In this document: piece by piece, positions 43,931-56,529 of the stretch
Numbering within the stretch: position 1 is the first letter of the stretch
Layout of the letters: each line of letters starts with the position of its first letter
NCBI GenBank assembly: GCA_907165135.1
Contig: OU015568.1
Coordinates: 15,387,208 to 15,451,207, forward strand
Length of the DNA stretch: 64,000 nucleotides
Reading direction: 5' to 3'
From: Oikopleura dioica
Taxonomy: Eukaryota; Animalia; Chordata
Notes under the pieces: model-generated
Database searches by the model: none
Seen by the model: the letters and a program-made list of their open reading frames with translations, nothing else
Told to the model about the DNA's origin: nothing
Position numbers and translations under genes: made by a program

Positions 43931-45678
43931 AAATATTCAATTCTTTTCTTTCTTCAATTTTATGCGGAAAATCAAGCAATGTAAAGAGCAGTTTCTTTCA
44001 TGAAATTAATCATTTGATCGGAACATACAGAAGCTGATTTTTAGAAGCGCTCTTTTGACACCAAAACATATTTTTAAAGCGCGCGCTGAATCAAAGTTGG
44101 ATTGATCCCGTGCCTTGCTAATGCGCATACCGAGAAGTTCTAATGTAATTTTAAAAGTGAAATGTTTACGATAATTGCGCCAGGATTAAAGCAACCAGAT
44201 GGCTAAATAAAATTCGACTTAGAAGCTGCCCGAGCAGGGTAATCAGTCGGTTTTCCGTATTTTGGATTTTTGTTGAATTAAAAAAGAAAAAGCGATTTTT
44301 AGAAATCCTTATGAAGCAGATTTCGTGACCAATTTTGAAATGATCCTTTCCGCTTTAGAATGCTGCCGCCAGAATTGATCTACTAAGTGTTATCTCCTTA
44401 CCTTTGCTCAAAGCACGAATGATCAATTAAGGAGGGTACGCAGAGTCGACGAAGTGTTGCGGGAAAATTGTTGCCAATTTTCTTGCTGGAAATGTTATTT
44501 TTGCATATAACGATTTTACCCGGAAAACCACGCATTTTCAACTATCAAAATTCGTCCTGAAAATTAACTGGCATTTCAGAACATGATCTTACCCGCTTTG
44601 ACATTTGCTAAACAAATTAAATAGAAAAAAATAAAGTGCTCGAAATACAGCTGTTTATCGTTTGTTACTTTGAGTTTGTAAGTTGTCTTATTTTCGAGAC
44701 AAAAAGTGAGTGAAGCTTTTGCTTTGAAAACAAATCATGTTTGATTTTTGAACGTGCGGGGCTAATCCTCTTTGAAAATATTATAAATGCAACCACTGAA
44801 ATCGAATCGAAGCTGGTTTATCTCGGCTTTTGCCTCGTGTCAAAGATTAACATTTACTTTATCGATGATAATACACAACATTGTTCATTTTCCAGCTTCA
44901 AAAATGCATCTTTGCGAAAAGAATATATTTTATACTTTTCTTCGAAAAATCAAGTCGACTCATCATCTTCATAAAAATTGCATAATGCGTCGTAGCAGCC
45001 CTTGAAAACGTTCGCACCTGTTTGATATTACGTGCGAAGTCTCCGGATAATCTTCTTCATTATGAATCAATTGCGTGTAATTATATGTATATAAACGGCG
45101 GCTGGCAATCTCAAGACGTGCAAGGGGTCGAAGATTAAATAAGCAATTTGATTGCGTTCTTTTTTTTTATTTTGATTCTCGTAACACAGATGGTAGTTTA
45201 AAATTAAATTTGACTTTTGAAAAGACACGTTTTTTGACACATCAGGCGTTTAATTTGATTCTTATACTGACGGGGATAAAAGGGTTGACTTTAAATGACC
45301 TTTTTTGACCAATCAAAATTGAAATAATTGTCCTTGAAGTCATTAAAATTGCGCAACAAGGCGGAGCCCTATCTGACGGCTAAAGTTAGTCTGGAACCTT
45401 ATCAGTATTTGTCTTATCGTTCGTTTGGGAAATACGAAAAATAGAAAAGGAGGACCTCAGAACATATTAGCCCCCTAATTATCGTTTTATCAAGCAGCTG
45501 GAAAGAAGCTCATTCTCCATACTTTTCAGCCCCTTTCTTCTAAAATCATTATCCGAACAGGAGCGATCAGAAACTGCTCGTCTACGGAGAAGAGTGAGTG
45601 ATTCTACGAAACTACCGTATTTGCATCGGAAGTGCATGGCGAATACCCCGCTCCCTCAATATATAAAACGGAAAAGAT

Positions 45679-46085
45679 GGGGCGCACTGACTATGTCGTC
45701 GAATGTCGTCGAATGTCGTCATTTTTCTAAAATTCAAAAAATAAAAGAAAAACTCTACTTTTGAAAACAAAGTGTTCTAGAGATTGCAACTAGCCAAACA
45801 GTCGGTTGTCTTAGCAAGAGCGAGAGTTGGGCCCCGCCAACCCAATGAGTTCTCTACCAGAGAATGCGCGCGTAAGGGCCTCTGGCCCGTCGCGTGCTTA
45901 TCAAATTTATGACTTTTTGCTCATTTTTGACGTTTTTAGGGCTCCTGGCAGAGTATCGAATATGTAACACATTTCGATGATTATTTTCTAGAACATACTT
46001 GTTTTTGAAATTTCGTTTTTTTTTTCGCAAGAAACGACGACATTCGACGACATTCGACGACATTCGACGATAGTCAGTGTCGACC
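45679..46085 (+). mobile_element. 407-bp non-autonomous TIR element, copy A
   Basis: TIRs GGGGCGCACTGACTATGTCGTCGAATG and its imperfect inverse ending ...TAGTCAGTGTCGACC, with subterminal (GTCGTCGAAT)n repeats. Nearly identical to 54774-55801. Flanked by GAAAAGAT (left) and AAATAATC (right). Confidence 0.9.
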
Positions 46086-46142
46086 AAATAATCAGACTCT
46101 GCTTACCCGAATCTATTCCCATTTCAGCTTATTTAAAAGATC

Positions 46143-48457
46143 ATGGTAAGGTCATCTTTGCTATTTTTCTTTTATGGGCCCTTAGAAACTATCAACCGCA
46201 ATCCTGACAAGCGTAGCAGCAAGCAGAGTTCGAAATCTGGTAGAAAATCCGTGCTCCCGCTCCCTCCCTGCTCCCTCGACCTGAAAAAAGGGAGCTCCCT
46301 CGTAAAAAACCCGTGCTCCTGCTCCCATTTTTCAAATTTCAAAAATTTTCGAAAGTTTTTCATTTTATTAAGTAAACTCTAAGTAGCAACACCATCGTTG
46401 TATGGTTATTATATAGCGCTGATAAAGAAAGTATAAATAGGCATAATGGCAAATAGGCGAATTTCGTGAATGACTTCAATGTTTTCTTATTAAAATTATA
46501 TAACCAAATCTAGGTCAATTTTAGGCTATTTATTTATATCAAATTTCAGAAGAGACATTTAAAAAATAAATCGAATCAAAAAACGTCTCTTCTAATAAAA
46601 ATCTGAGCAAACACGGTATCTAAATTAATAATTTTGCTTATAATCTGAGAAAAATACATTTTGTTGAAATTATTAAAGTCAAACTAGATGTGATTTTGGC
46701 TAAATATTTATATGAAATTTTAAAAGAGACGTTTATAAATATATCTAGTCAAAAAAACGTCTCTTCTAAGAAAAATACTATAAAGTAAGCGTTTCTCATT
46801 TTTCGGTGCGCAGATAAGATTCTAGACTAAAAATTGTTGATTTTCAAAAAATTTTTTGAAATTGGGAGCAAATTGGGAGCTCCCAATTTACTCCCAACCC
46901 TGGAAACCTGTGCTCCTGCTCCCTCCGTGCTCCCAAAAAAGGGAGCTCCCTTTGGGAGCTCCCAATTTTACTCCCATAGATTTCGGACTCTGGCGACAAG
47001 CCCTTTTCTGGCTGAAAGTCAAGAAGCAAATGCATTTTTGAGCAGAACTCGAGGAGGGGTTTATCGAAGAACTCAAAGACGGTAATTGGGAGCGAGAGTG
47101 CATTGAGGAGGACTGTAACGCAAATGAGGCGTATGAGGTTGTTGATGATGAGGAACAAGGCGAATGATTGTTCGATTTGGTAAATGACTGTAAAGAAAAA
47201 CATAATACAAGGGAGAGTCAAAGCAACTGTGTTGAAAGTGGGATGCCTGCTGTAACTAGAGGCTCTAGTTACTAGAGCTACTGGCTTTCAAACCCCAGTT
47301 AACTGTGGTTCCGATTATTTCAGGCCTGGTGCAGAATGGCCTCTTCAAAATAATCTTGTCGGGGCTCAAAGTGGTACGACAGTCAGAAAATGTGTTTTAT
47401 TTGCTATTTGGATGTTGGAATTAAATATTTTTCTTCCTTTTTAAAACAAGAGACAAGACTCTGTCAAAATAATTTTGGAAAAGATCATTACTTTGCAACC
47501 CTCTTCAACACCGATACCAACCTTCCGGTGTACTCTGCCGTCAAGATTCGGTAAAATTCTCTTCGAAAATTCCTGATCCTAAAATATTAGTCGAGCCAAG
47601 AAAGGTCCAACATATCCGAGACCTGGTAATCCACCAAAGGTGGATGGTGTTTTTAAGTCAATCTGAAGCTACATGTGCGAGGGTCTTTGCGGAACTAACA
47701 CTCCTCCATCTTACACGTCTTTTTATTGCAATCTTGACGAAGTTGAGAGTCCAAATGACTGCGATAAATGGCAACCTCAGGTTCTTTTTTTAAATCTCTT
47801 TGATTCTTATGATAAATACTCAGCACGAAGACTGGGGACATCTCATGCCAAATGCTTTGTTGAACCAAGTCAGAGACGCAGCCAACTCAACCTTCACTCT
47901 CACCAATGTCAGCCCACAACTCGGCGAGTTCAATGAGGGGGCTTGGAATCAGCTTGAATGCATGGTTAGGAAATTCATGGAAGAAGAAATCAACAATGAA
48001 GATTTTGGATCATCGTTGGAACTCACGGGAAAATTCACGTAATGAATGACGAAGAAGACTCTAAGAAGAATAGAATTGATATTCCGGAATTTTACTGGCA
48101 TGCGTTTTGTTACATAGGCATTGGTAAAGAATTATGTCATGCGAGATAACTGTGAATTACGTTGGATAAAGATATCTTTAACCATACTTTACGGGCCCAA
48201 AAACAACAACTATTCATGGGTTTACATGCAAAAGAACGCAAATGACCAAAGACAATCCTCAGGTAGATACGTTCTAACCGGAATTCCTTTCTAAATTTTA
48301 AGGTGATAACTTCATGCCCGTTGAATCCTTCTCCAATACATATTATAACGGAGCGGCCATTTTCGACAGCGTCTGTCAGAAGCCTTCTCGAGGTTTTGGC
48401 AACTGGAATAAGGTCATCACTGATTGGTCTGGCCTCAGACGTCGATGGAACTGCTAG
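46143..48457 (+). pseudogene. Gla domain fused to a DNA/RNA non-specific endonuclease (Endonuclease_NS / ENDOD1-like); disrupted
   Basis: ATG|GTAAG at 46143 (assignment as exon 1 is inferred). Propeptide and Gla: SPFLAESQEANAFLSRTR..FIEELKDGNWERECIEEDCNANEAYE. Nuclease motifs: LCQ, YFATLFNTDTNLPVYSAVKI, DWGHLMPN, STFTLTNVSPQLGEFNEGAWNQLECMVRKF, IDIPEFYWHAFC, IFDSVCQ. Lesions: +G at 47056-59, TGA at 47165, a 16-bp insertion at 47262-77, an extra base at about 47320, and -T at 48003-06. Confidence 0.75.
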
Positions 48458-48528
48458 ATGATTAGACCGTGCAATAAAACAGCTCAAAGCAATATCTTCT
48501 TAATTTTTTTTCTGGAAACTGATCTTAA

Positions 48529-49084
48529 GGGATCCCCCCCACCCCCGATTTCGTCAACTTTGACTTCGAACTACTTTTTTTAGGGCTGAGCTTTTTACCA
48601 GTATGAATGCTCATTTTGAAGCCCGTTTCTTAATGAACAAACTCTTGTATAGAAATTTATTTTCGTAAGGGGAAACATCTTGAAAAAACGGGCTGAAAAC
48701 ATTGATACTCGCGAAAAACACCATTTTGGGCCATTTTCAAAATCGAACTAGTTTTTTCTGCTCTTAGATAGAGCCCTAAATCAATAAAAACTGTCTTCCT
48801 CCATCCCTGATCTACAATCTCTTGTACAGGCATGTGATTCCGTCAAGGATTGTAGAATTTTTGATTTTTACTGATTGATTTACTGGTTAGATATTTTATT
48901 AAATCAATTTTTTCTAAGTAAAATTTTTCGTTAAAATAAGCCATTTTCAAAGCTGTGTCACGGCTTACCACGTGACGGACTCCCTTCGACATAATATATG
49001 AAAATGATCGCCATACAACGGAGATTCCAAAAATATATCACATAAAAGCTCTCGATGATATTATTTAAATCGGGAGGGTATCCC
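48529..49084. mobile_element. TTAA-flanked MITE (Kolobok-like termini)
   Basis: TTAA|GGGATCCCCCCC at the left end and GGGAGGGTATCCC|TTAA at the right end. Confidence 0.65.
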
Positions 49085-49422
49085 TTAAGGAAGTACAGTG
49101 GTGTGTTCAGTTGCTTCACCCCTGACCCGCACTTTTTCTATTGTAGCAAAAGTGAGTGCTGCGTTTCTGCACCTTTTACCCGCTGTCTAGGGGTGCAGCA
49201 ACTCCACACACCACTGTAGGACTAGGATTTGACAATGATGGAATATTAAGAGTTAGGGTGATCTATCTACTGTTCTTTCACTTACATAAAACAAATAATC
49301 AGAGCTTTTTCCTTTTCGGTCAATATTTTGCATCACGAATTCTTTTTCAACGACCAAATAAATTTAATAAATTCTTTAATTCTTTGATTATGGATGATAA
49401 TTTATGAATATAAATGCACATT

Positions 49423-51693
49423 TTAGTCAAGAGCATCTTCGGACAGAGCTAAAGAGATTTCTATAGAAAAGGCTTCGGGGAAAAGATACCATCTTCCAAT
49501 TTTCATGTTTCCGAATTCTTCGTTGACAATTTCCATTGAATATCCATCACCAACAAGAACCGCGGAGCCGTTTTCTTCGAGATTCTCGAAAAATGCTCCG
49601 CCGTAGATGTAATAAGGGTCGGAGACGGGAATTTTGACAACGGGAGCTTCTAGGGGCAGCTCTGATTGAAGAGAAAATTGAGTGTTTTGGAGAATGAAGT
49701 TTCCAGACTCAATGCGGTCGATTGTCATTTGATGGAAAAAGGGTTCCGACTCTTCATCGAATAAGTAGACCCCGGTGACTGTGAGCGGACGGGAGAAAGT
49801 AAACAACGGATGAAGAATAACTATGAGAGATTTTATGAATAAATGATATTTGAGATTATTACCTTTTCTGTAAATGCAGCTCGAGACAATTGGACGTTTT
49901 TCTCGTTCTTTCCCAAGACGTCTGATAATTTCCCAGCCGCTTTCCATTAAATATGTTTGATGACACAGTCGCTGCAGAAGAACTTCGACTTGATTCGTTT
50001 GTTTTTCTTGTTCATCCTTTGTAGGATTCAAATTCAATCCAGACATACTTCTAGGATAAACGATCATCGTCAATGTCGAGAGAATATTTTCGAAAGAGTA
50101 CTGTCTGTAAAACCAATCATCAAAATCAAGGTCTTTCTTGATCGCGTGCCGAAGAAGCGTCGTCACAGATATCGGAACGCAAAGATCACTGCTTTTTTGG
50201 TCAAGAATATTTTTGGTCAAATTTTCCATGTTTAAATTGACGCATTTTGTTATGTTTTCTTTAAGACTTGACATGTTGCAGGATTGGGTCAGATTCGGAT
50301 CGTCTAAGCAAAATGAGGAGTCAGCTTCGTCCAGACAGATGATTTTTGTAATTTCATCAAGAATTAAAAGATTTTTGCTCTCGTGAATGAGATCAGCATT
50401 ACAGCGCTGAAATTTGAAAAAAATAATATCGTTTTTTTTTTCTTACTTTGACAATTTCGTCAATCTTTTTTCTTTCTTCCTCCAAAATTGGCTTATAAAG
50501 AAGCGTCCAAGAAGTTCTCCAATTACAAAACAGAAAATACCAAATATTGTTTGTTCTATAACCATTTCCGTTCGCCAGCTGTAATTGAAAAGTGAATGCA
50601 GGCGAGCCAGCGACTAAATAGTGCTCATTTTAGAGTTTTAAAAAATCACTTACAAAGTATGCTATTTGCATATTTGGACCCTCTTCTGGTGTAGCCCATT
50701 TGTCTGTAGCCTTCTATTCCTGATGTTTCGTTGACCAGGCCAAAATCAATGATTTTTGGGATTCCATCGAGAAGCATAACGTTTGCCATTTTTAAATCTA
50801 AGTGAGTTATTCCGACATCCAACAAATAATTAAATCCCTTTAGAAGGCCCCATCCAATTTTTTTTCTTTGCTCAAGATCAAGTTGATCTTCTTTCAGCAG
50901 GAATCTCAAATCTGTATCTGCCTTTTCCATGATTGTTATCCACCCAGTGCATTCCTCCATTTTTGAGTCCTTTTTATTGAATAACTCGATATTTGCAAAA
51001 TGTTTGATAACGTTTTTATGAAATGGCATCTGATTTTGGTTTTCTGTTTCTTCTTTATTTTCCGCGTGTTCGAAATCTAAGACTGAATAGAAGCCCAAAA
51101 ATCAAAAAGAACAAACCTTCGGCAATGTTTATTTTCCACATAATTGAGTCCAAACCCAAATTATCCGTAAACAGAAAAGGGTCAAAAACTTGAACCCGAA
51201 CCGCAGTTTCTAAACATCCGATCTTATCTCCAAAAACAATCGCCTCTCCTCCCATTGAAATCAATTTAGTTTTCAAAGAACTTCTAAGTTCCCACTCACC
51301 AGTTTCTTCTTTAATATCCCATCGACTGATAAATTTGTTTTTGAGAGACGTATCATTTTCCAAAATCATTTTTTGAGCTGCAGTTATTTTAAAACTTTCT
51401 ATTTTCGTTCTATCTCGGTGATAGATATATCCTCGATCTTCCTCAAAAAGACAAAATTCCCAATGATACGCACTGTTAAATTTCTCGAAGACCATTTTTT
51501 CGATTGTCGAAATCAATCGACACTTCTCCGTCAGCGTCGATGTTCTCTTTAATTGCGGCAAGAAAGAACCAAGCCATGTCTCAATCTCTTTTTTTTCAAG
51601 GTTTTCTTCTTTCAAATCGGCGGAATTGTCGATAAAAAGCCATTTTAAAAGCCAGACGCAAAAGAACGCCGAAAAAAAAATTTCCTCGAGCAT
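49423..51693 (-). CDS. Atypical protein kinase-like domain fused to a C-terminal papain-like (clan CA) cysteine protease domain; intact 5-exon gene, about 702 aa
   Basis: Exons 51693-51117, 51076-50654, 50613-50447, 50406-49863 and 49820-49423 are joined by GT-AG introns of 40, 40, 40 and 42 bp into one open 2109-nt frame. Kinase motifs: SMGGEAIV, TAVRV, HLDLKMANVML, IIDFG. Protease motifs: DQKSSDLCVPIS (Q to C+6) and FHQMTIDRIESGNFILQN (H to N+16). The start codon is uncertain. Confidence 0.85.
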
Positions 51694-51949
51694 TGCTACT
51701 CTATTTCTTCAAATTAAGGAGCTCCTTATTTTTGCAGATGTTATACACGAAAAACTAGTAGCCGTTGCTTAGCATTCCCTTTTTCTTCGAAAAATGCTTA
51801 TTTCTATGGTCCTATTTGTTTTGTGATATTTGCAAGTGTTATAAAAAATCGATAGGAGTCAAACGAAAGGGGGTGTGTTACAGTTATTAACCATAGTTTG
51901 AATATTTCTTACCGCTTTAACTAGCTTAAACGTTTCTAAATAGTTTCTT

Positions 51950-52090
51950 CATGCAAGCTTCATGTCCGGAATAAGGTCATGAATGATTGGGCTGGCTACA
52001 GATGTACATGAAGATGCTAGAAATTTACAAAAGTTTCGTTCAATAAAACGGCTCAATTGATTGACAATATCTTTAAATTTTTCCCGAAAT
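51950..52090 (+). pseudogene. Remnant of the last exon and 3' UTR of a nuclease paralog
   Basis: GGAATAAGGTCATGAATGATTGGGCTGGCTACAGA...GCTAG...CAATAAAACGGCTCAA resembles 48405-48500. Confidence 0.5.
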
Positions 52091-52234
52091 ATTTCTTACA
52101 GATTAATGGTAACATGAAAATAATATTCAGGTTGTCAATAAGGAGTTCTACTGAACTACCACTCAGACAAAACAAATAATCAGAGCTCGGTCCTCTTACA
52201 GATCAATCATTTCAGAGCCTTTTAACTAGAGATC

Positions 52235-52895
52235 AGTACTGAGAGAGGCAATTTTCTGTCAGTTAGATTTTCTGGCAGTTAGACTTTCTGGCAAAGGCGA
52301 AGAGAGTTATCACTAAAATACTATTTTTGGCGAAAATGGTACTAGAAATTAGGAACGTGCAGCAACAACAAAATTTTAGTAAAAAGCACTGTTCTTAGTG
52401 ATAACTCTCTTCAGAGTATTCATACAACCTTCATTTTTTACCCTGCAGGAGAACTGACTATAAGAAACAATTTCCGGCGTCAAACATTAGTCTATCACTT
52501 CTAGAACGAAAACGGCCGGTGACAACGTATTTTCCGGTAACCAGCCGGTAAACCGGTCAATCCTACGAGTTATCAGGAGTTAGACCCATCGTTCGACTCG
52601 TCTTGACGAGCTTAAGAAAACTGCACTTGCAGTTTTTTTACGATTTCCGGCCCCTCAAATAGTTTTTTGAAATCATCCTCAGAAGAATCAGAAGATGAAT
52701 TCCGATCTTTTCTTCTCTCCGTTTTTTACCTTCCAGAATCAATAACTGTATATTCAAAATTAAAAGAGGCGATTTTCTGGAAATTAGATTTTCTGTCATA
52801 TTTGATTTTCTGGCAGTGCCAGAAAATCGCCTTTGCCAGAAAGTCTAACTGCCAGAAAATCTAACTGCCAGAAAATCGCCTCTCTCATCAGTACT
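52235..52895. mobile_element. TIR element with about 65-bp TIRs built from TTTTCTGGCAGTTAG repeats
   Basis: AGTACTGAGAGAGGCAATTTTCTGTCAGTTAG... and ...CTAACTGCCAGAAAATCGCCTCTCTCATCAGTACT. A TA target duplication is plausible. Confidence 0.8.
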
Positions 52896-54424
52896 ATGGT
52901 AGGTTTTCTTTTTTCATAAATTTTTCTTTATCGATTGATAGAAAATTTCCACGACGATTCTCGCAGGAGTCTCAGCAAGTCCATTTCTCGCTGACAGTCA
53001 AGAAGCAAATGCATTTTTGAACAGAACTCGTCGAGCTTGGCAGTTTTTCGAAGAAACCAAAGATGGAAACTGGGAGCGAGAGTGCATCGAAGAGTACTGT
53101 AATGCGAATGAGGCGTTTGAAGTTGTAGATGAAGAAGTGAGAGGAAAGAGGTTGTTTGATTTAGTGACCGAGTGTAAGAAAAAATATCCAGCGACGTAAG
53201 AGCAGGGCGTTTTTCTACCATTTTTTAATGATTATTTAGGGCGAATCAGAGAAAATGTGTCGAAAACGGTCTCCAACCTTCTTGGGGCGAGTGGGGTGAG
53301 TGGTCTGCTTCTTTTGCCACTTGCATCAATCCCGTTACTGGATCCATGGTACAGTTATTTATAGAATTTGTGGACATTTTTTGTCCGCAAGTTTTCTGAA
53401 AAATAGCCACAAATTTGATACAGAGCCCCGAAAAAAATGTCCCAACAATCTTGCTTAAATTATTTTTGAGAAGCAAAAATTGATGATTTTTTTCAAAAAA
53501 TAATAAAAAACGGAACACAAGAAGGAAGTTAAAGACATAAATCTTAACAAAAATTAAGATTATTGACGAAAAAAAGCTCTTTGCATATAAAATTGGCTTC
53601 AATAACTAAAGTTTGACCATTTATTTAGGAGTCAAAGATTTCAATTGACAAAAATGTCCACAAATTTGATACCCTCTCTTTCTAAATGTGTCCCAAGAAA
53701 ACCCCTTAAAATCTAAAAAATGTCCACAAATTTGATGTCCACAAATTCCATAAAAAACTGTACATGAATAAAAAAAAAGGTTGAAAGTAACACCTGTCGC
53801 CTTTCAGAAAAAAACGTTGAAACTGCCAACCTGGAGTTGAATCTCTCACTTGCCAGATCGACGAAATGGCTCGTGGAGCATCTTCAGTTTCTACTAGTGG
53901 CGATAAAGGACAACTCATGCAGTCAGACCTTCAAATATTTCCATTTTTATCTGCTCTTTTCATAGTTGATAGCTCTTGCTAGTCAAAATCCGAGCCTTGC
54001 CAAGCTGAAGAATGCAACCCACTGAAATCCGACTTGGATATTCGCATCAGCAATGGAGACACAATCGTCGCTAGAATGAGCTGGTTTCCGCTCGAAGGAA
54101 TTGTCAGAAACGGAGAGCTGAAGATTTACTAGAGAATCAATAGTGAAGTTTTTGCCAACTACATCGGCCAGGTAACTTCAACAGTTTTTCATCAAAAAAT
54201 GCTCGTTTTTCAAGTCAAAACAATTTTCCTACTACGACACTGCTCCAGCATCTCTCCGAAGCCGTTCAAAAATCACCATCGATGAAAACGGTCGCTGGGC
54301 GGAACTGAGAATCAAGCAAATGACCCCTCAGGACGAAGGAATGATGATTTCGATAGAAATTCACTATGAAGGTTATTTCGATGAACAAGCTGTTGTTGTT
54401 CCCTCTTCTCGACCCGATTACTAA
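52896..54424 (+). pseudogene. Gla domain plus Ig-like domain protein, with an in-frame stop
   Basis: ATG|GTAGG...GATAG| gives MKISTTILAGVSASPFLADSQEANAFLNRTRR-AWQFFEETKDGNWERECIEEYCNANEAFE. Later exons give ARMSWFPL..ELKIY*RIN..RSKITIDENGRWAELRIKQMTPQDEG. The TAG at 54130 occupies a probable Trp position. Linking the exons across the 53.2-53.8 kb intron is inferred. Confidence 0.65.
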
Positions 54425-54773
54425 ATAAACAATTTTTGTCTTGATCCAAGAATCTTGAAGTTTTTTATGTTCATGTTTTATTTCTCGCGGGCTTTATGCA
54501 ATTGTAAATTTGCGATGCTCAAAGGAAGGCTGTCTGAGTTGAAGGTTTTGCTCGGAGGTGTTATCGTCTTAAAATGATATTGATTGAGAAAGTGCTTCAA
54601 AATACCTTGATCGCTGTTTCTTCTGAACTTTCGCTGCCACTTAGTCTTAGGGGAATCGTGATGGAGCTCAGAGACTTTCGATTTTCAGTCAAAATCGACC
54701 AGATTAAACATGGATTTAGGTCTTAGGATTAAACAGTTCCTATATTTAGTCAGTCGTTCAAAAGCAAATAATC

Positions 54774-55801
54774 GGGGCGCACTGACTATGTCGTCGAATG
54801 TCGTCGAATGTCGTCATTTTTCTAAAATTCAAAAAATAAAAGAAAAACTCTACTTTTGAAAACAAAGTGTTCTAGAGATTGCAACTAGCCAAACAGTCGG
54901 TTGTCTTAGACGCGTTTTTTTTAGGTTGGGAACTAATAACTTTTGACTGGAACAAGATCAAGAGGAGGTTAAGGGCGCAAAATGATGCTCAGAAAAAATA
55001 AAAATTTCGCACCGCATTAGATTTTTCGATTTCGGTACCAGACTTCCGGTATTGAAATTCGGTACCAATTTATGTCGTGGTATCGGTACCAAACTAGTAC
55101 CAAAAAAATCTCCAGAAAATTTCATGAAGACTAGTACAAAAAGCTAACTGTAGGAAGTACTTATTTTCATTTGACAGCGCTCTGAAATCACGGTTTTTTG
55201 TTGATTTTGGGCAATTTTGAGGTAAATCAAGGTCCGCTCATTCAGGCCGGAAGTAACGAAGTACTGATATTTTGGTACCAGTCTTCATGAAATTTTCTGG
55301 AGATTTTTTTGGTACTAGTTTGGTACCGATACCACGACATAAATTGGTACCGAATTTCAATACCGGAAGTCTGGTACCGAAATCGAAAAATCTAATGCGG
55401 TGCGAAATTTTTATTTTTTCTGAGCATCATTTTGCGCCCTTAACCTCCTCTTGATCTTGTTCCAGTCAAAAGTTATTAGTTCCCAACCTAAAAAAAAACG
55501 CGTCTTAGCAAGAGCGAGAGTTGGGCCCGCCAACCCAATGAGTTCTCTACCAGAGAATGCGCGCGTAAGGGCCTCTGGCCCGTCGCGTGCTTATCAAATT
55601 TATGACTTTTTGCTCATTTTTGACGTTTTTAGGGCTCCTGGCAGAGTATCGAATATGCACATATATATACACATATATATACACATTTCGATGATTATTT
55701 TCTAGAACATACTTGTTTTTGAAATTTCGTTTTTTTTTTCGCAAGAAACGACGACATTCGACGACATTCGATGACATTCGACGACATAGTCAGTGTCGAC
55801 C
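54774..55801 (+). mobile_element. Same TIR element, copy B, carrying a nested foldback insertion
   Basis: Direct repeat of copy A plus a 596-bp insertion. Flanked by AAATAATC (54766-54773) and GAAAAGAT (55802-55809). Confidence 0.9.
54909..55504. mobile_element. Foldback element with about 225-bp TIRs and a TTA target duplication (PIF/Harbinger-like)
   Basis: Near-perfect inverted repeat, 54909 to about 55132 against about 55280-55504. The empty site in copy A reads GGTTGTCTTAGCAAG, showing TTA duplicated in a C-TTA-G target. Confidence 0.95.
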
Positions 55802-56529
55802 GAAAAGATTGGCCAACCACGGTCCCACATGGGGATAAGCTATCTGCGGCGATGTTAATAACGCTTGTACAACAACACTGATCACCACCGGATATCTACC
55901 ATACAGTATGGTCCATACTCGCCAAATTCAGCGCTTCAAATTGAAGCCTTCAATACAACAAAATGAGGCCTTCAACTTCTGCTCGGTATCTGAACACGGA
56001 AAGCTTAGTTGAAAAATCTTTTAAGACCCAGAAAATAAAATGAAACTAAAAAATTGCATAAAAGAATTTGAATCTTCCAGGAAGAGTGTTTTCAACGCGG
56101 CGGAATAAAATCACGCTAGCAAAAGAATCGTCAAAACAGGATCGGTAACACAATTATTCCAATCGTTTCAAGCTTGATTTAGCTTCGATTGGCTAAATTA
56201 ACCCATCTCGCAGAGCATTACGGATTATGCCATGCGATTTTGCCTCACCTGCTTTAGAAGCGCGCTTTTTGGAGCGTGTTCAATTTTGGAAATTTAATTT
56301 TTGAAAATCTTATTTCTTAATCACAAGCGAAATTTTTCTTATTAAATTTTTTTCGTTTTCAAAAATCGATTTTATAGAATAATTCTTTACTTTGAATGAA
56401 ACAGCCTTTTCTCCACCCCGAATTTCAAATTTCGGCCAATCAGAATACTGCTTTTCTCCCGTCGACGAATCAGAACCAAGAAAACCTCAACATTCAATTT
56501 GCGGCATATTTGTCGTTTTTTTTTACACT

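What the first reader, a model, noticed from the sequence alone, without database searches (positions are those of the whole stretch)
45671..55809. Swapped target-site duplications: an 8.7-kb gene cargo inserted as a composite or cointegrate via a circularly permuted intermediate
Seen: two direct copies of one TIR element are arranged GAAAAGAT-[A]-AAATAATC...cargo...AAATAATC-[B]-GAAAAGAT. Each 8-mer flanks the opposite side of the other copy. Inference: the two cargo ends were once joined at a single AAATAATC insertion site, so the cargo was circular or tandemly duplicated. It then entered the GAAAAGAT site either by recombination with a resident copy or as a macro-transposon. The cargo (46086-54773) carries the Gla-nuclease gene, the intact kinase-protease gene and the Gla-Ig gene. 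This would be a direct footprint of MITE-driven gene relocation, relevant to the genome scrambling reported for Oikopleura.
Basis: partly seen in the sequence, partly recalled or inferred. Interest (0 to 1): 0.87.

Follow-up and report, generated by a model that had tools for sequence, protein, structure and literature searches.

The report
Transposon pair with swapped target duplications
Two near-identical copies of a small transposon in the Okinawan Oikopleura dioica genome bracket an 8.7-kb three-gene block and carry each other's 8-bp target duplications, which suggests that the element and the DNA on both its sides were inserted together as one unit; this is not yet confirmed by reads.

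Summary
Copy A (45679-46085, 407 bp) and copy B (54774-55801, 1028 bp) are direct repeats. B is A plus a nested MITE and a microsatellite. The flanks read GAAAAGAT|A|AAATAATC ... AAATAATC|B|GAAAAGAT, exactly (chance about 1e-9). A and B differ by one substitution in 406 aligned bases.

The window is O. dioica OKI2018_I69, PAR chromosome (window position + 15,387,207). This is a Nanopore assembly with no gaps here.

Evidence for insertion as a unit:
- The AAATAATC site and its surroundings match an uninterrupted paralogous promoter module upstream of the second Gla gene. The two cargo ends were therefore probably once joined, though the support on the c2 side is only about 6-7 bases.
- A homology break in the middle of an exon at 51967|51968 is a candidate internal junction.
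- Contigs of two other Okinawan runs hold AAATAATC plus the cargo start with no element in front.
- Two further runs hold the left flank but no unique cargo at 90% identity or more.

Not shown: none of the four junctions was seen in the read output shown, and no empty site or donor locus was found.

Best reading: a composite insertion from aberrant transposition, as known for maize Ac/Ds. The rivals are circle integration by recombination, a macrotransposon, ectopic gap repair, and an assembly artefact.

The Gla-nuclease copy here is broken.

The parts
45671..45678 (.). Left copy of the outer 8-bp duplication, GAAAAGAT (site X)
   Evidence: identical to 55802-55809.
45679..46085 (+). Element copy A, 407 bp, with imperfect TIRs and subterminal GTCGTCGAAT repeats
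   Evidence: Multicopy in reads.
46086..46093 (.). Inner 8-mer AAATAATC (site Y) to the right of A. It is part of the promoter module of the Gla-nuclease gene.
46094..54765 (.). The 8.7-kb block between the two copies (the 'cargo')
   Evidence: No second copy in the window.
46143..48461 (+). Gla plus non-specific endonuclease gene. In this haplotype it is disrupted by a MITE in exon 2 and by a frameshift near 47055.
   Evidence: Pfam Gla and Endonuclease_NS. Translation compared with the read allele.
46224..46992 (.). 769-bp hAT-like MITE (TIR CAGAGTTCGAAATCT; 8-bp duplication GCAGCAAG/GCGACAAG). It is absent from X1 and X2 contigs.
   Evidence: joint 46219->46997.
48497..49218 (.). Multicopy repeats (small MITEs) downstream of the nuclease gene
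   Evidence: Depth; inverted repeats.
49423..51693 (-). Kinase-domain gene made of three long ORF-exons of 212, 150 and 283 aa. It belongs to an expanded O. dioica family.
   Evidence: Pkinase in the middle exon; no Pfam hit for the other two.
51967..51968 (.). Abrupt start of homology in the middle of an exon; candidate junction of the two cargo tracts
   Evidence: the 80 nt upstream are 23/80 identical (random), and the first 13 nt after the break are identical.
51968..52212 (+). Remnant of a nuclease 3' end plus a second copy of the promoter module (contains AAATAATCAGA at 52174)
52240..52887 (.). MITE with 61-nt TIRs and a 9-bp duplication ATCAGTACT, directly in front of the ATG of the second Gla gene
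52896..54424 (+). Stop codon at 54422-54424.
54766..54773 (.). Inner 8-mer AAATAATC (site Y) to the left of B
54774..55801 (+). Element copy B, 1028 bp. It equals A plus a nested MITE, a 21-nt microsatellite, two small indels and one substitution.
54910..55501 (.). Nested 592-bp MITE with 228-nt TIRs inside B (5-7-bp duplication)
   Evidence: (I1).
55802..55809 (.). Right copy of the outer 8-bp duplication, GAAAAGAT (site X)

Best explanation
This is a composite insertion.

Starting state (inferred): one copy of an 8-bp-duplicating TIR element sat at AAATAATC in the promoter of the Gla-nuclease gene, directly downstream of the second Gla gene. The native order was therefore Gla-Ig then Gla-nuclease.

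The event (inferred): in one aberrant transposition, the left end of the element on one sister chromatid (or copy) and the right end on the other were used together. Each end stayed attached to a whole element and to the DNA beyond it. Both ends inserted at GAAAAGAT, 1.9 kb downstream of a GH1 beta-glucosidase gene. The two dragged or re-copied flank tracts were then joined by end joining, probably at 51967|51968. One tract is about 5.9 kb (Gla-nuclease and the kinase gene). The other is about 2.8 kb (the second Gla gene).

Result: element, right flank | left flank, element, bounded by the new duplication.

Shown here: the exact swapped 8-mers, the near-identity of the two copies, that the element is multicopy, and the promoter-module homology, which spans AAATAATC but reaches only about 7 bases onto the c2 side.

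Inferred: the order of events, the use of sister-chromatid ends, re-replication or repair synthesis, and the position of the internal junction.

My odds: about 0.65 that element plus cargo entered GAAAAGAT as one unit by some route, and about 0.38 for this particular route.
For: - Exact reciprocal 8-mers at identical element boundaries, with a chance probability of about 1e-9.
- A and B differ by 1 substitution in 406 aligned bases, two small indels, a microsatellite and a later MITE. This fits two copies made from one element.
- A sequence rebuilt from the last 200 bp left of B (ending at 54765), AAATAATC and the start of the cargo right of A aligns continuously with the region upstream of the second Gla gene. 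The alignment runs from 7 nt left of AAATAATC through promoter, ATG, intron, signal peptide and Gla exon.
- There is an abrupt mid-exon homology break at 51967|51968.
- X1 record 3 carries 46085-46219 joined to 46997-47237, preceded by 1032 letters that match neither element A nor the 1.7 kb of left flank. The contig does not break at AAATAATC.
- X3 and X4 hold the left flank at 1-9% divergence but no unique cargo at 90% identity or more.
- No scaffold gap lies in the window. Copy A is 407 bp, which I believe is shorter than the assembler's minimum overlap (that figure is from my own knowledge), and the assembly used 221x Nanopore coverage.
- The same architecture (transposon end plus its flank | flank plus transposon end, bounded by an 8-bp duplication) was produced experimentally by Ac/Ds alternative transposition with re-replication. 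Such insertions can later move as macrotransposons.
Against: - No read or contig shown bridges any of the four junctions.
- At 46130 and 46137 both X1 and X2 show only the non-window base. X1 is otherwise identical to the window and may be the assembled individual, yet it shows no element in front of the cargo start.
- The identity of the 1032 upstream letters is unknown.
- The cargo start is present in more than two copies in X2 (depth 675 against about 205), so the element-free contig may be a paralogue rather than an allele.
- In X1 the unique cargo has about the same depth as the flank (47 against 56), which does not fit a retained donor plus a new copy in that individual.
- The break at 51967|51968 borders a 71%-identical, old duplication and may be ancient.
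- No autonomous element or transposase is known for this family, and its TIR does not fit the hAT consensus.
- Single-element sister-chromatid events with re-replication have not, to my knowledge, been described in tunicates.
Confidence: 0.38

Rival explanations
1. Integration of a circle by homologous recombination. An extrachromosomal circle held one element copy at AAATAATC plus 8.7 kb of its surroundings. It recombined with a resident copy already sitting at GAAAAGAT. The result is resident-left/circle-right (A) and circle-left/resident-right (B).
For: It gives exactly the observed flank pattern. The Genome Research 2024 paper on O. dioica scrambling notes that few interspersed repeats suffice for rearrangement by homologous recombination. 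The 163 bases (136 + 27) at the left end of the element are identical in A and B, and the small differences lie further right. That pattern is compatible with a crossover.
Against: It needs two independent family copies that were almost identical (1 substitution in 406). It also needs a circle formed from exactly this segment and a 407-bp homology target. No solo element at GAAAAGAT was seen in any run.
Confidence: 0.15
2. Macrotransposon from a tandemly duplicated donor. The segment containing the element was first duplicated in tandem at its native locus, giving element-cargo-element with AAATAATC on both inner sides. The outer ends of the pair were then used for ordinary cut-and-paste transposition into GAAAAGAT.
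For: The outer ends are intact and bounded by an 8-bp duplication. The region is built from old tandem paralogous modules. Ac macrotransposons that excise and reinsert are documented. Single-copy depth of the cargo in X1 fits cut-and-paste.
Against: It needs an extra step, a recent tandem duplication, for which there is no trace. X1 shows cargo at flank depth, not doubled.
Confidence: 0.12
3. Two-ended ectopic gap repair. An element excised from GAAAAGAT. Both broken ends copied the element from the sister chromatid, switched template to the copy at AAATAATC and ran on into its two flanks. The diverging new strands were then joined by microhomology.
For: It yields the same topology without a circle. 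O. dioica is reported to rely on microhomology-mediated end joining. The near-identity of A and B fits copying.
Against: It needs 5.9-kb and 2.8-kb synthesis tracts and a resident element at GAAAAGAT. The donor should persist, so the cargo should be duplicated, which X1 depth does not show.
Confidence: 0.12
4. Assembly artefact. The elements at GAAAAGAT and at AAATAATC are at two different loci or haplotypes, and the haploid Nanopore assembly of a 3.6% heterozygous male joined them wrongly.
For: Median read length was only 840 bp and heterozygosity 3.6%. Neither X1 nor X2 matches the window over the whole stretch: X1 differs at 46085-47237 and X2 at 44658-45553. No junction-bridging contig was shown.
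Against: An assembler would also have to join the two far ends of the cargo, which are not adjacent unless the block is really circular or tandem. Copy A (407 bp) is short compared with the reads that were used. There are no gaps. The unique 3%-diverged segment must come from real reads.
Confidence: 0.13

Closest known systems
Composite Insertions made by Ac/Ds alternative transposition with re-replication in maize (Zhang et al., eLife 2014, PMC4270019; Sharma et al., Genetics 2022, PMC9910405)
   Same: Transposon termini lie at both ends, bounded by one 8-bp target duplication. The interior is made of DNA that flanked the donor transposon ends, with the two tracts joined at an internal junction. 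Sizes are 5-20 kb. The product can behave as a macrotransposon.
   Different: In maize the ends come from two different elements (Ac and a fractured Ac) in reversed orientation, and the short segment between them is lost. Here both ends are complete copies of one non-autonomous element, and the two inner flanks are the two halves of a single target duplication. This is an animal genome, the transposase is unknown, and nothing was tested experimentally.
P-element hybrid element insertion in Drosophila (ends of one element taken from two sister chromatids; from my own knowledge, and mentioned in papers listed)
   Same: A single 8-bp-duplicating element is involved, with its left and right ends taken from different chromatids. 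It inserts nearby and produces duplications or deletions next to the element.
   Different: The described products are flanking duplications or deletions and recombinant chromosomes. They are not a block carrying both flanks between two complete copies at a new site.
Bacterial cointegrates and IS26 translocatable units (my own knowledge)
   Same: The arrangement is identical: target duplication, element, cargo, element, target duplication, with the donor's flanks facing inward.
   Different: These are made by replicative or targeted conservative reactions of IS6-family transposases on circular replicons. No such enzyme or replicon is known here, so it is an analogy of structure only.
Exchange of target duplications by ectopic recombination between two transposon copies (Galileo inversions in Drosophila, PMC2775673; seen as a title, the paper was not read)
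   Same: Swapped target duplications are used as the footprint of a transposon-mediated rearrangement.
   Different: As I recall that work, the copies there are inverted and the product is an inversion. Here the copies are direct, which for a linear chromosome requires insertion of a circular or circularly permuted unit.

Membership tests
Composite insertion (alternative transposition product) | Two transposon ends in normal outward orientation, bounded by one target duplication of the length typical for the family | tested here: met
   GAAAAGAT lies on both outer sides of A and B, and the element boundaries are identical.
Composite insertion (alternative transposition product) | The interior consists of DNA that flanked the donor element, with each tract still attached to its own end | tested here: inconclusive
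   The inner flanks are the two halves of one AAATAATC duplication, and the rebuilt site matches an uninterrupted paralogous module. The donor locus itself was not seen.
Composite insertion (alternative transposition product) | An internal junction joins the two tracts (end joining or recombination) | tested here: inconclusive
   There is an abrupt mid-exon break at 51967|51968 and a second break near 49331. Their age is unknown, and X1 and X2 contigs cross them.
Composite insertion (alternative transposition product) | The structure is absent from relatives, which show the empty target | tested here: inconclusive
   X3 and X4 keep the left flank but lack unique cargo at 90% or more.
hAT superfamily non-autonomous element | 8-bp target duplication | tested here: met
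   Both duplications are exactly 8 bp. This could not be repeated on a simple insertion of the family.
hAT superfamily non-autonomous element | Short TIRs starting with the YARNG-type consensus (CAG/TAG) | tested here: not met
   The termini are GGGGCGCACTG and GGTCGACACTG. In contrast, the 769-bp MITE at 46224 starts with CAGAG. P-like or Merlin-like affinity is equally open.
hAT superfamily non-autonomous element | Mobilised by a hAT transposase (autonomous partner) | not testable with these tools
   There is no coding copy in the window, and the rest of the genome is not searchable here.
Replicative cointegrate (bacterial type) | Formed by a replicative transposase between two replicons | not testable with these tools
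   Only the final arrangement is the same. No such system is known in animals (my own knowledge).
Compound transposon / macrotransposon | Two independent insertions flank a native segment, so the inner flanks are unrelated to each other | tested here: not met
   The inner flanks are the same 8-mer in the reciprocal position. A prior tandem duplication would be needed.
Inversion by ectopic recombination between copies | The copies are in inverted orientation with exchanged duplications | tested here: not met
   A and B are direct repeats.

The most novel reading that the evidence does not exclude
A young composite insertion in a chordate, still polymorphic within one laboratory culture. A single MITE carried both of its flanks (three genes, 8.7 kb) to a new site in one step. 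If so, this is a caught-in-the-act mechanism for the small-scale gene-order scrambling of Oikopleura dioica. The strongest version is that the intermediate was a real extrachromosomal circle that re-integrated.
Probability: 0.45. Interest if true: 0.72.

Novelty: new member of a known kind. Interest (0 to 1): 0.6.

Why it matters
O. dioica lineages differ by thousands of small rearrangements, and their mechanism is unknown. The authors of the scrambling study only speculate about transposons, microhomology-mediated repair and recombination between sparse repeats.

A block of genes bounded by two copies of one MITE with reciprocal target duplications would be a sequence-level footprint of one such move. 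It would show that aberrant transposition of non-autonomous elements can relocate or duplicate whole genes in this genome. Until now this has been documented mainly in maize genetics experiments.

The claim is directly testable with existing Nanopore data and with PCR on the Okinawan culture. If it proves to be an artefact, it still flags a locally unreliable, hypervariable stretch of the reference.

Tried and rejected
- **Other assemblies via proteins:** the 283-aa kinase-family exon found only paralogues at about 50% identity, in unrelated Bergen contexts. The RING-like gene left of the site found nothing. The GH1 exon led back to the window's own genome, which identified the source but gave no independent locus.
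- **Exact look-up of ten window ORFs:** none is in the protein collection, so Logan contigs of the O. dioica runs cannot be fetched that way.
- **Exact-pattern scans:** scans for the predicted donor junction, the empty site and the TIR core in metagenome and viral contigs were all empty.
- **Non-coding RNA:** Rfam and tRNA scans of 44-58 kb found nothing relevant.
- **Gene across GAAAAGAT:** the idea that a gene spans the rebuilt site was rejected, as there is no meaningful ORF.
- **BLAST of the rebuilt donor junction:** the match to 49288 and 52169 alone was not significant (E = 1.3). It became meaningful only as part of the long module alignment.
- **Chance and inversion:** chance was rejected as the explanation for the 8-mers. 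Inversion was rejected because the copies are direct.
- **Single read-laying run:** it covered only the A side (44000-49999). The B side, the right flank and the loose-end letters at 46085 could not be obtained.
Full report
**What is there**

Reading the sequence and running repeat and BLAST analysis confirm two direct copies of one terminal-inverted-repeat element.
- Copy A is 45679-46085 (407 bp).
- Copy B is 54774-55801 (1028 bp).
- Both start with GGGGCGCACTGACTAT and end with ATAGTCAGTGTCGACC. Both carry three to four subterminal GTCGTCGAAT repeats on each side.

A global alignment shows that B equals A with these differences:
- a nested 592-bp MITE (54910-55501, 228-nt TIRs);
- a 21-nt CA/TA microsatellite;
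- a 1-nt and a 2-nt indel;
- one substitution in 406 aligned bases.

The eight bases outside the boundaries are GAAAAGAT|A|AAATAATC and AAATAATC|B|GAAAAGAT. The probability that both partner 8-mers match by chance is about 1e-9. No other copy of the element is in the window.

**Source**

A locus fetched through the neighbouring GH1 beta-glucosidase gene is 100% identical to window 32419-53797. The window is therefore Oikopleura dioica OKI2018_I69, chromosome PAR (OU015568.1), with window position + 15,387,207 giving the record position.

That assembly came from one male. It used 221x Nanopore reads (median 840 bp, maximum 166 kb), Canu, Racon and Pilon, at 3.6% heterozygosity. A second male of the same culture (I28) and a Hi-C pool were also sequenced. 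There is no gap in the window.

**The block between the copies**

Pfam confirms the following:
- a Gla domain and an Endonuclease_NS domain in the first gene (46143-48461, + strand);
- a protein kinase domain in the middle exon of the minus-strand gene (49423-51693);
- a Gla domain in the third gene (52896-54424, + strand).

The 'protease' and 'Ig' parts gave no Pfam hit. The 283-aa exon does have many O. dioica relatives.

Several small transposons sit in the block:
- a 769-bp hAT-like MITE at 46224-46992;
- multicopy repeats at 48497-49218;
- a MITE at 52240-52887 with a 9-bp duplication, directly before the ATG of the third gene.

**Were the two cargo ends once joined?**

I rebuilt a sequence from the last 200 bp left of B (ending at 54765), one AAATAATC and the start of the cargo right of A. 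It aligns continuously with the region upstream of the third gene, after the MITE there is removed. The alignment runs from 7 nt left of AAATAATC through the promoter, the ATG, a short intron, the signal peptide and the Gla exon. A third, truncated copy of the same module lies at 49266-49331.

AAATAATCAGA is thus part of a duplicated promoter module that is uninterrupted in the paralogues. This is what one expects if the element inserted once into that site and the two halves of the insertion site now lie 8.7 kb apart. The support on the left side is short (6 of 7 bases). On the right side it is long.

**Internal breakpoints**

Homology between the 3' end of the nuclease gene (48405-48508) and 51968-52082 starts abruptly in the middle of the last exon. 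The first 13 nt are identical, while the 80 nt upstream are at random identity. The truncated promoter copy ends abruptly near 49331.

The kinase gene is therefore bracketed by an old (71-78% identical) direct duplication. Their age cannot be told from the window.

**Reads of other individuals**

Four runs hold both sides of the structure. All are kept as short-word contigs, so none can bridge a multicopy element. What they show:
1. The element region has 8-60 times the depth of the flank, and shorter end-to-end derivatives exist. It is a real repeat family.
2. In X1, a 1414-nt contig holds window 46085-46219 joined to 46997-47237. These are preceded by 1032 letters that match nothing in 44000-49999, so they are neither copy A nor the left flank. 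The contig does not break at AAATAATC, so X1 has no second predecessor there.
3. At 46130 and 46137, X1 and X2 show only the non-window base.
4. X1 is identical to the window in the left flank (601 nt) and in the cargo from 47208 on (1364 and 811 nt). Its cargo depth (47) is close to its flank depth (56).
5. X3 and X4 hold the left flank at 1-9% divergence up to about 45.2-45.5 kb. They have almost no unique cargo at 90% identity or more.

Points 2 and 5 fit an element-free donor arrangement and a cargo that is not fixed at this place. There are three caveats:
- The 1032 letters could not be read.
- The cargo start is present in more than two copies in X2, so a paralogue is possible.
- The output shown (which lists only the longest pieces) included no contig that supports the window's own four junctions.

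**Interpretation**

For a linear chromosome, direct copies with reciprocal duplications mean two things. The sequence left flank-GAAAAGAT-right flank was once continuous. The sequence cargo end-AAATAATC-cargo start was also once continuous. The element plus the circularly permuted cargo now lies inside the first site.

Single crossovers between two ordinary insertions give deletions, duplications or translocations with only one hybrid copy, so they do not produce this pattern. Inversion is excluded because the copies are direct.

Four routes give the observed structure:
1. **Aberrant transposition.** The two ends of one element are taken from two sister chromatids, each end dragging its flank, followed by re-replication or repair and end joining. 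This architecture has been produced experimentally in maize as 'Composite Insertions', bounded by 8-bp duplications and 5-20 kb long, and these can later move as macrotransposons.
2. **Recombination of a circle with a resident copy.**
3. **Macrotransposition from a tandemly duplicated donor.**
4. **Two-ended ectopic gap repair.**

The near-identity of A and B favours routes in which both copies descend from one element. I therefore rank route 1 first (0.38) and give about 0.65 to unit insertion by any route.

An assembly artefact (0.13) would also have to join the two far ends of the cargo. I consider that unlikely, but the lack of read support for the window's haplotype keeps it alive.

The Gla-nuclease copy in this haplotype is not intact. 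A hAT-like MITE sits in its signal-peptide exon. Even with that MITE removed, the reading frame breaks near 47055. The allele seen in X1 and X2 contigs (five extra bases and five substitutions) reads through a normal signal peptide, an RTRR propeptide site and the Gla domain. The public annotation calls only a 108-aa nuclease fragment here.

A true replicative cointegrate is not required.

**Novelty**

The kind of structure is known from maize Ac/Ds, from P-element hybrid insertions and, as an analogy, from bacterial IS26 units. I found no description of it in a tunicate; the two O. dioica genome papers I checked mention MITEs only as a repeat-annotation step. It bears on how O. dioica gene order gets scrambled.

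Earlier notes of this scan record other hAT-type MITEs, and one note's title mentions a composite hAT-like element elsewhere in this genome. I did not find this structure noted before.

Noticed in passing
window 46224-46992: A 769-bp hAT-like MITE (TIR CAGAGTTCGAAATCT; 8-bp duplication GCAGCAAG/GCGACAAG with two changed bases) is inserted in exon 2 (signal peptide) of the Gla-nuclease gene. Contigs of X1 and X2 join 46219 to 46997 and so lack it. No exact GT-AG removal is possible.
   Followed up: partly
window 46143-47185: The assembled Gla-nuclease allele is frameshifted near 47055. The allele in X1, X2 and X3 contigs has five extra bases (GCCTG) and, in X1 and X2, further substitutions. It reads through the signal peptide, the RTRR site and the Gla domain. 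The NCBI annotation calls only a 108-aa nuclease fragment.
   Followed up: yes
window 52240-52887: A MITE with 61-nt TIRs made of GATTTTCTGGCA-like repeats and a 9-bp duplication ATCAGTACT is inserted immediately before the ATG (52896) of the second Gla gene. It gives weak, sub-threshold miRNA-precursor-like Rfam hits.
   Followed up: partly
window 46086, 49293, 52174: There are three copies of a promoter/5' module containing AAATAATCAGA. The two Gla genes share promoter, ATG followed at once by an intron, signal peptide and Gla exon, so they are old tandem paralogues with different C-terminal domains.
   Followed up: partly
window 48405-49331 and 51968-52212: The kinase gene block (49332-51967) is bracketed by an old direct duplication of about 180-245 bp (nuclease 3' end plus promoter start, 71-78% identical). 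Both edges are abrupt, as if the kinase gene had been inserted there long ago.
   Followed up: partly
window 54910-55501: A 592-bp MITE with 228-nt, 99% complementary TIRs is nested in element copy B and absent from copy A. The duplication is ambiguous, either 5 bp (CTTAG) or 7 bp (GTCTTAG).
   Followed up: no
window 45815-45898: The central part of the element has far higher read depth (3000-8700) than its ends. Many contigs leave it at 45815/45832 and 45871/45898. This roughly 80-bp core is therefore shared with other, more abundant repeat families.
   Followed up: no
window 49423-51693: The kinase-family gene, with three long open exons, is not among the genes listed for the public record in this stretch. 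Only three genes were listed for the 21-kb stretch fetched.
   Followed up: no
window 44000-50000 (reads): The locus is hypervariable within one laboratory culture. X1 matches the window in the left flank but not at 46085-47237. X2 is homozygous for another left-flank haplotype at 44658-45553 and holds the window-like cargo at about one haplotype's depth.
   Followed up: partly
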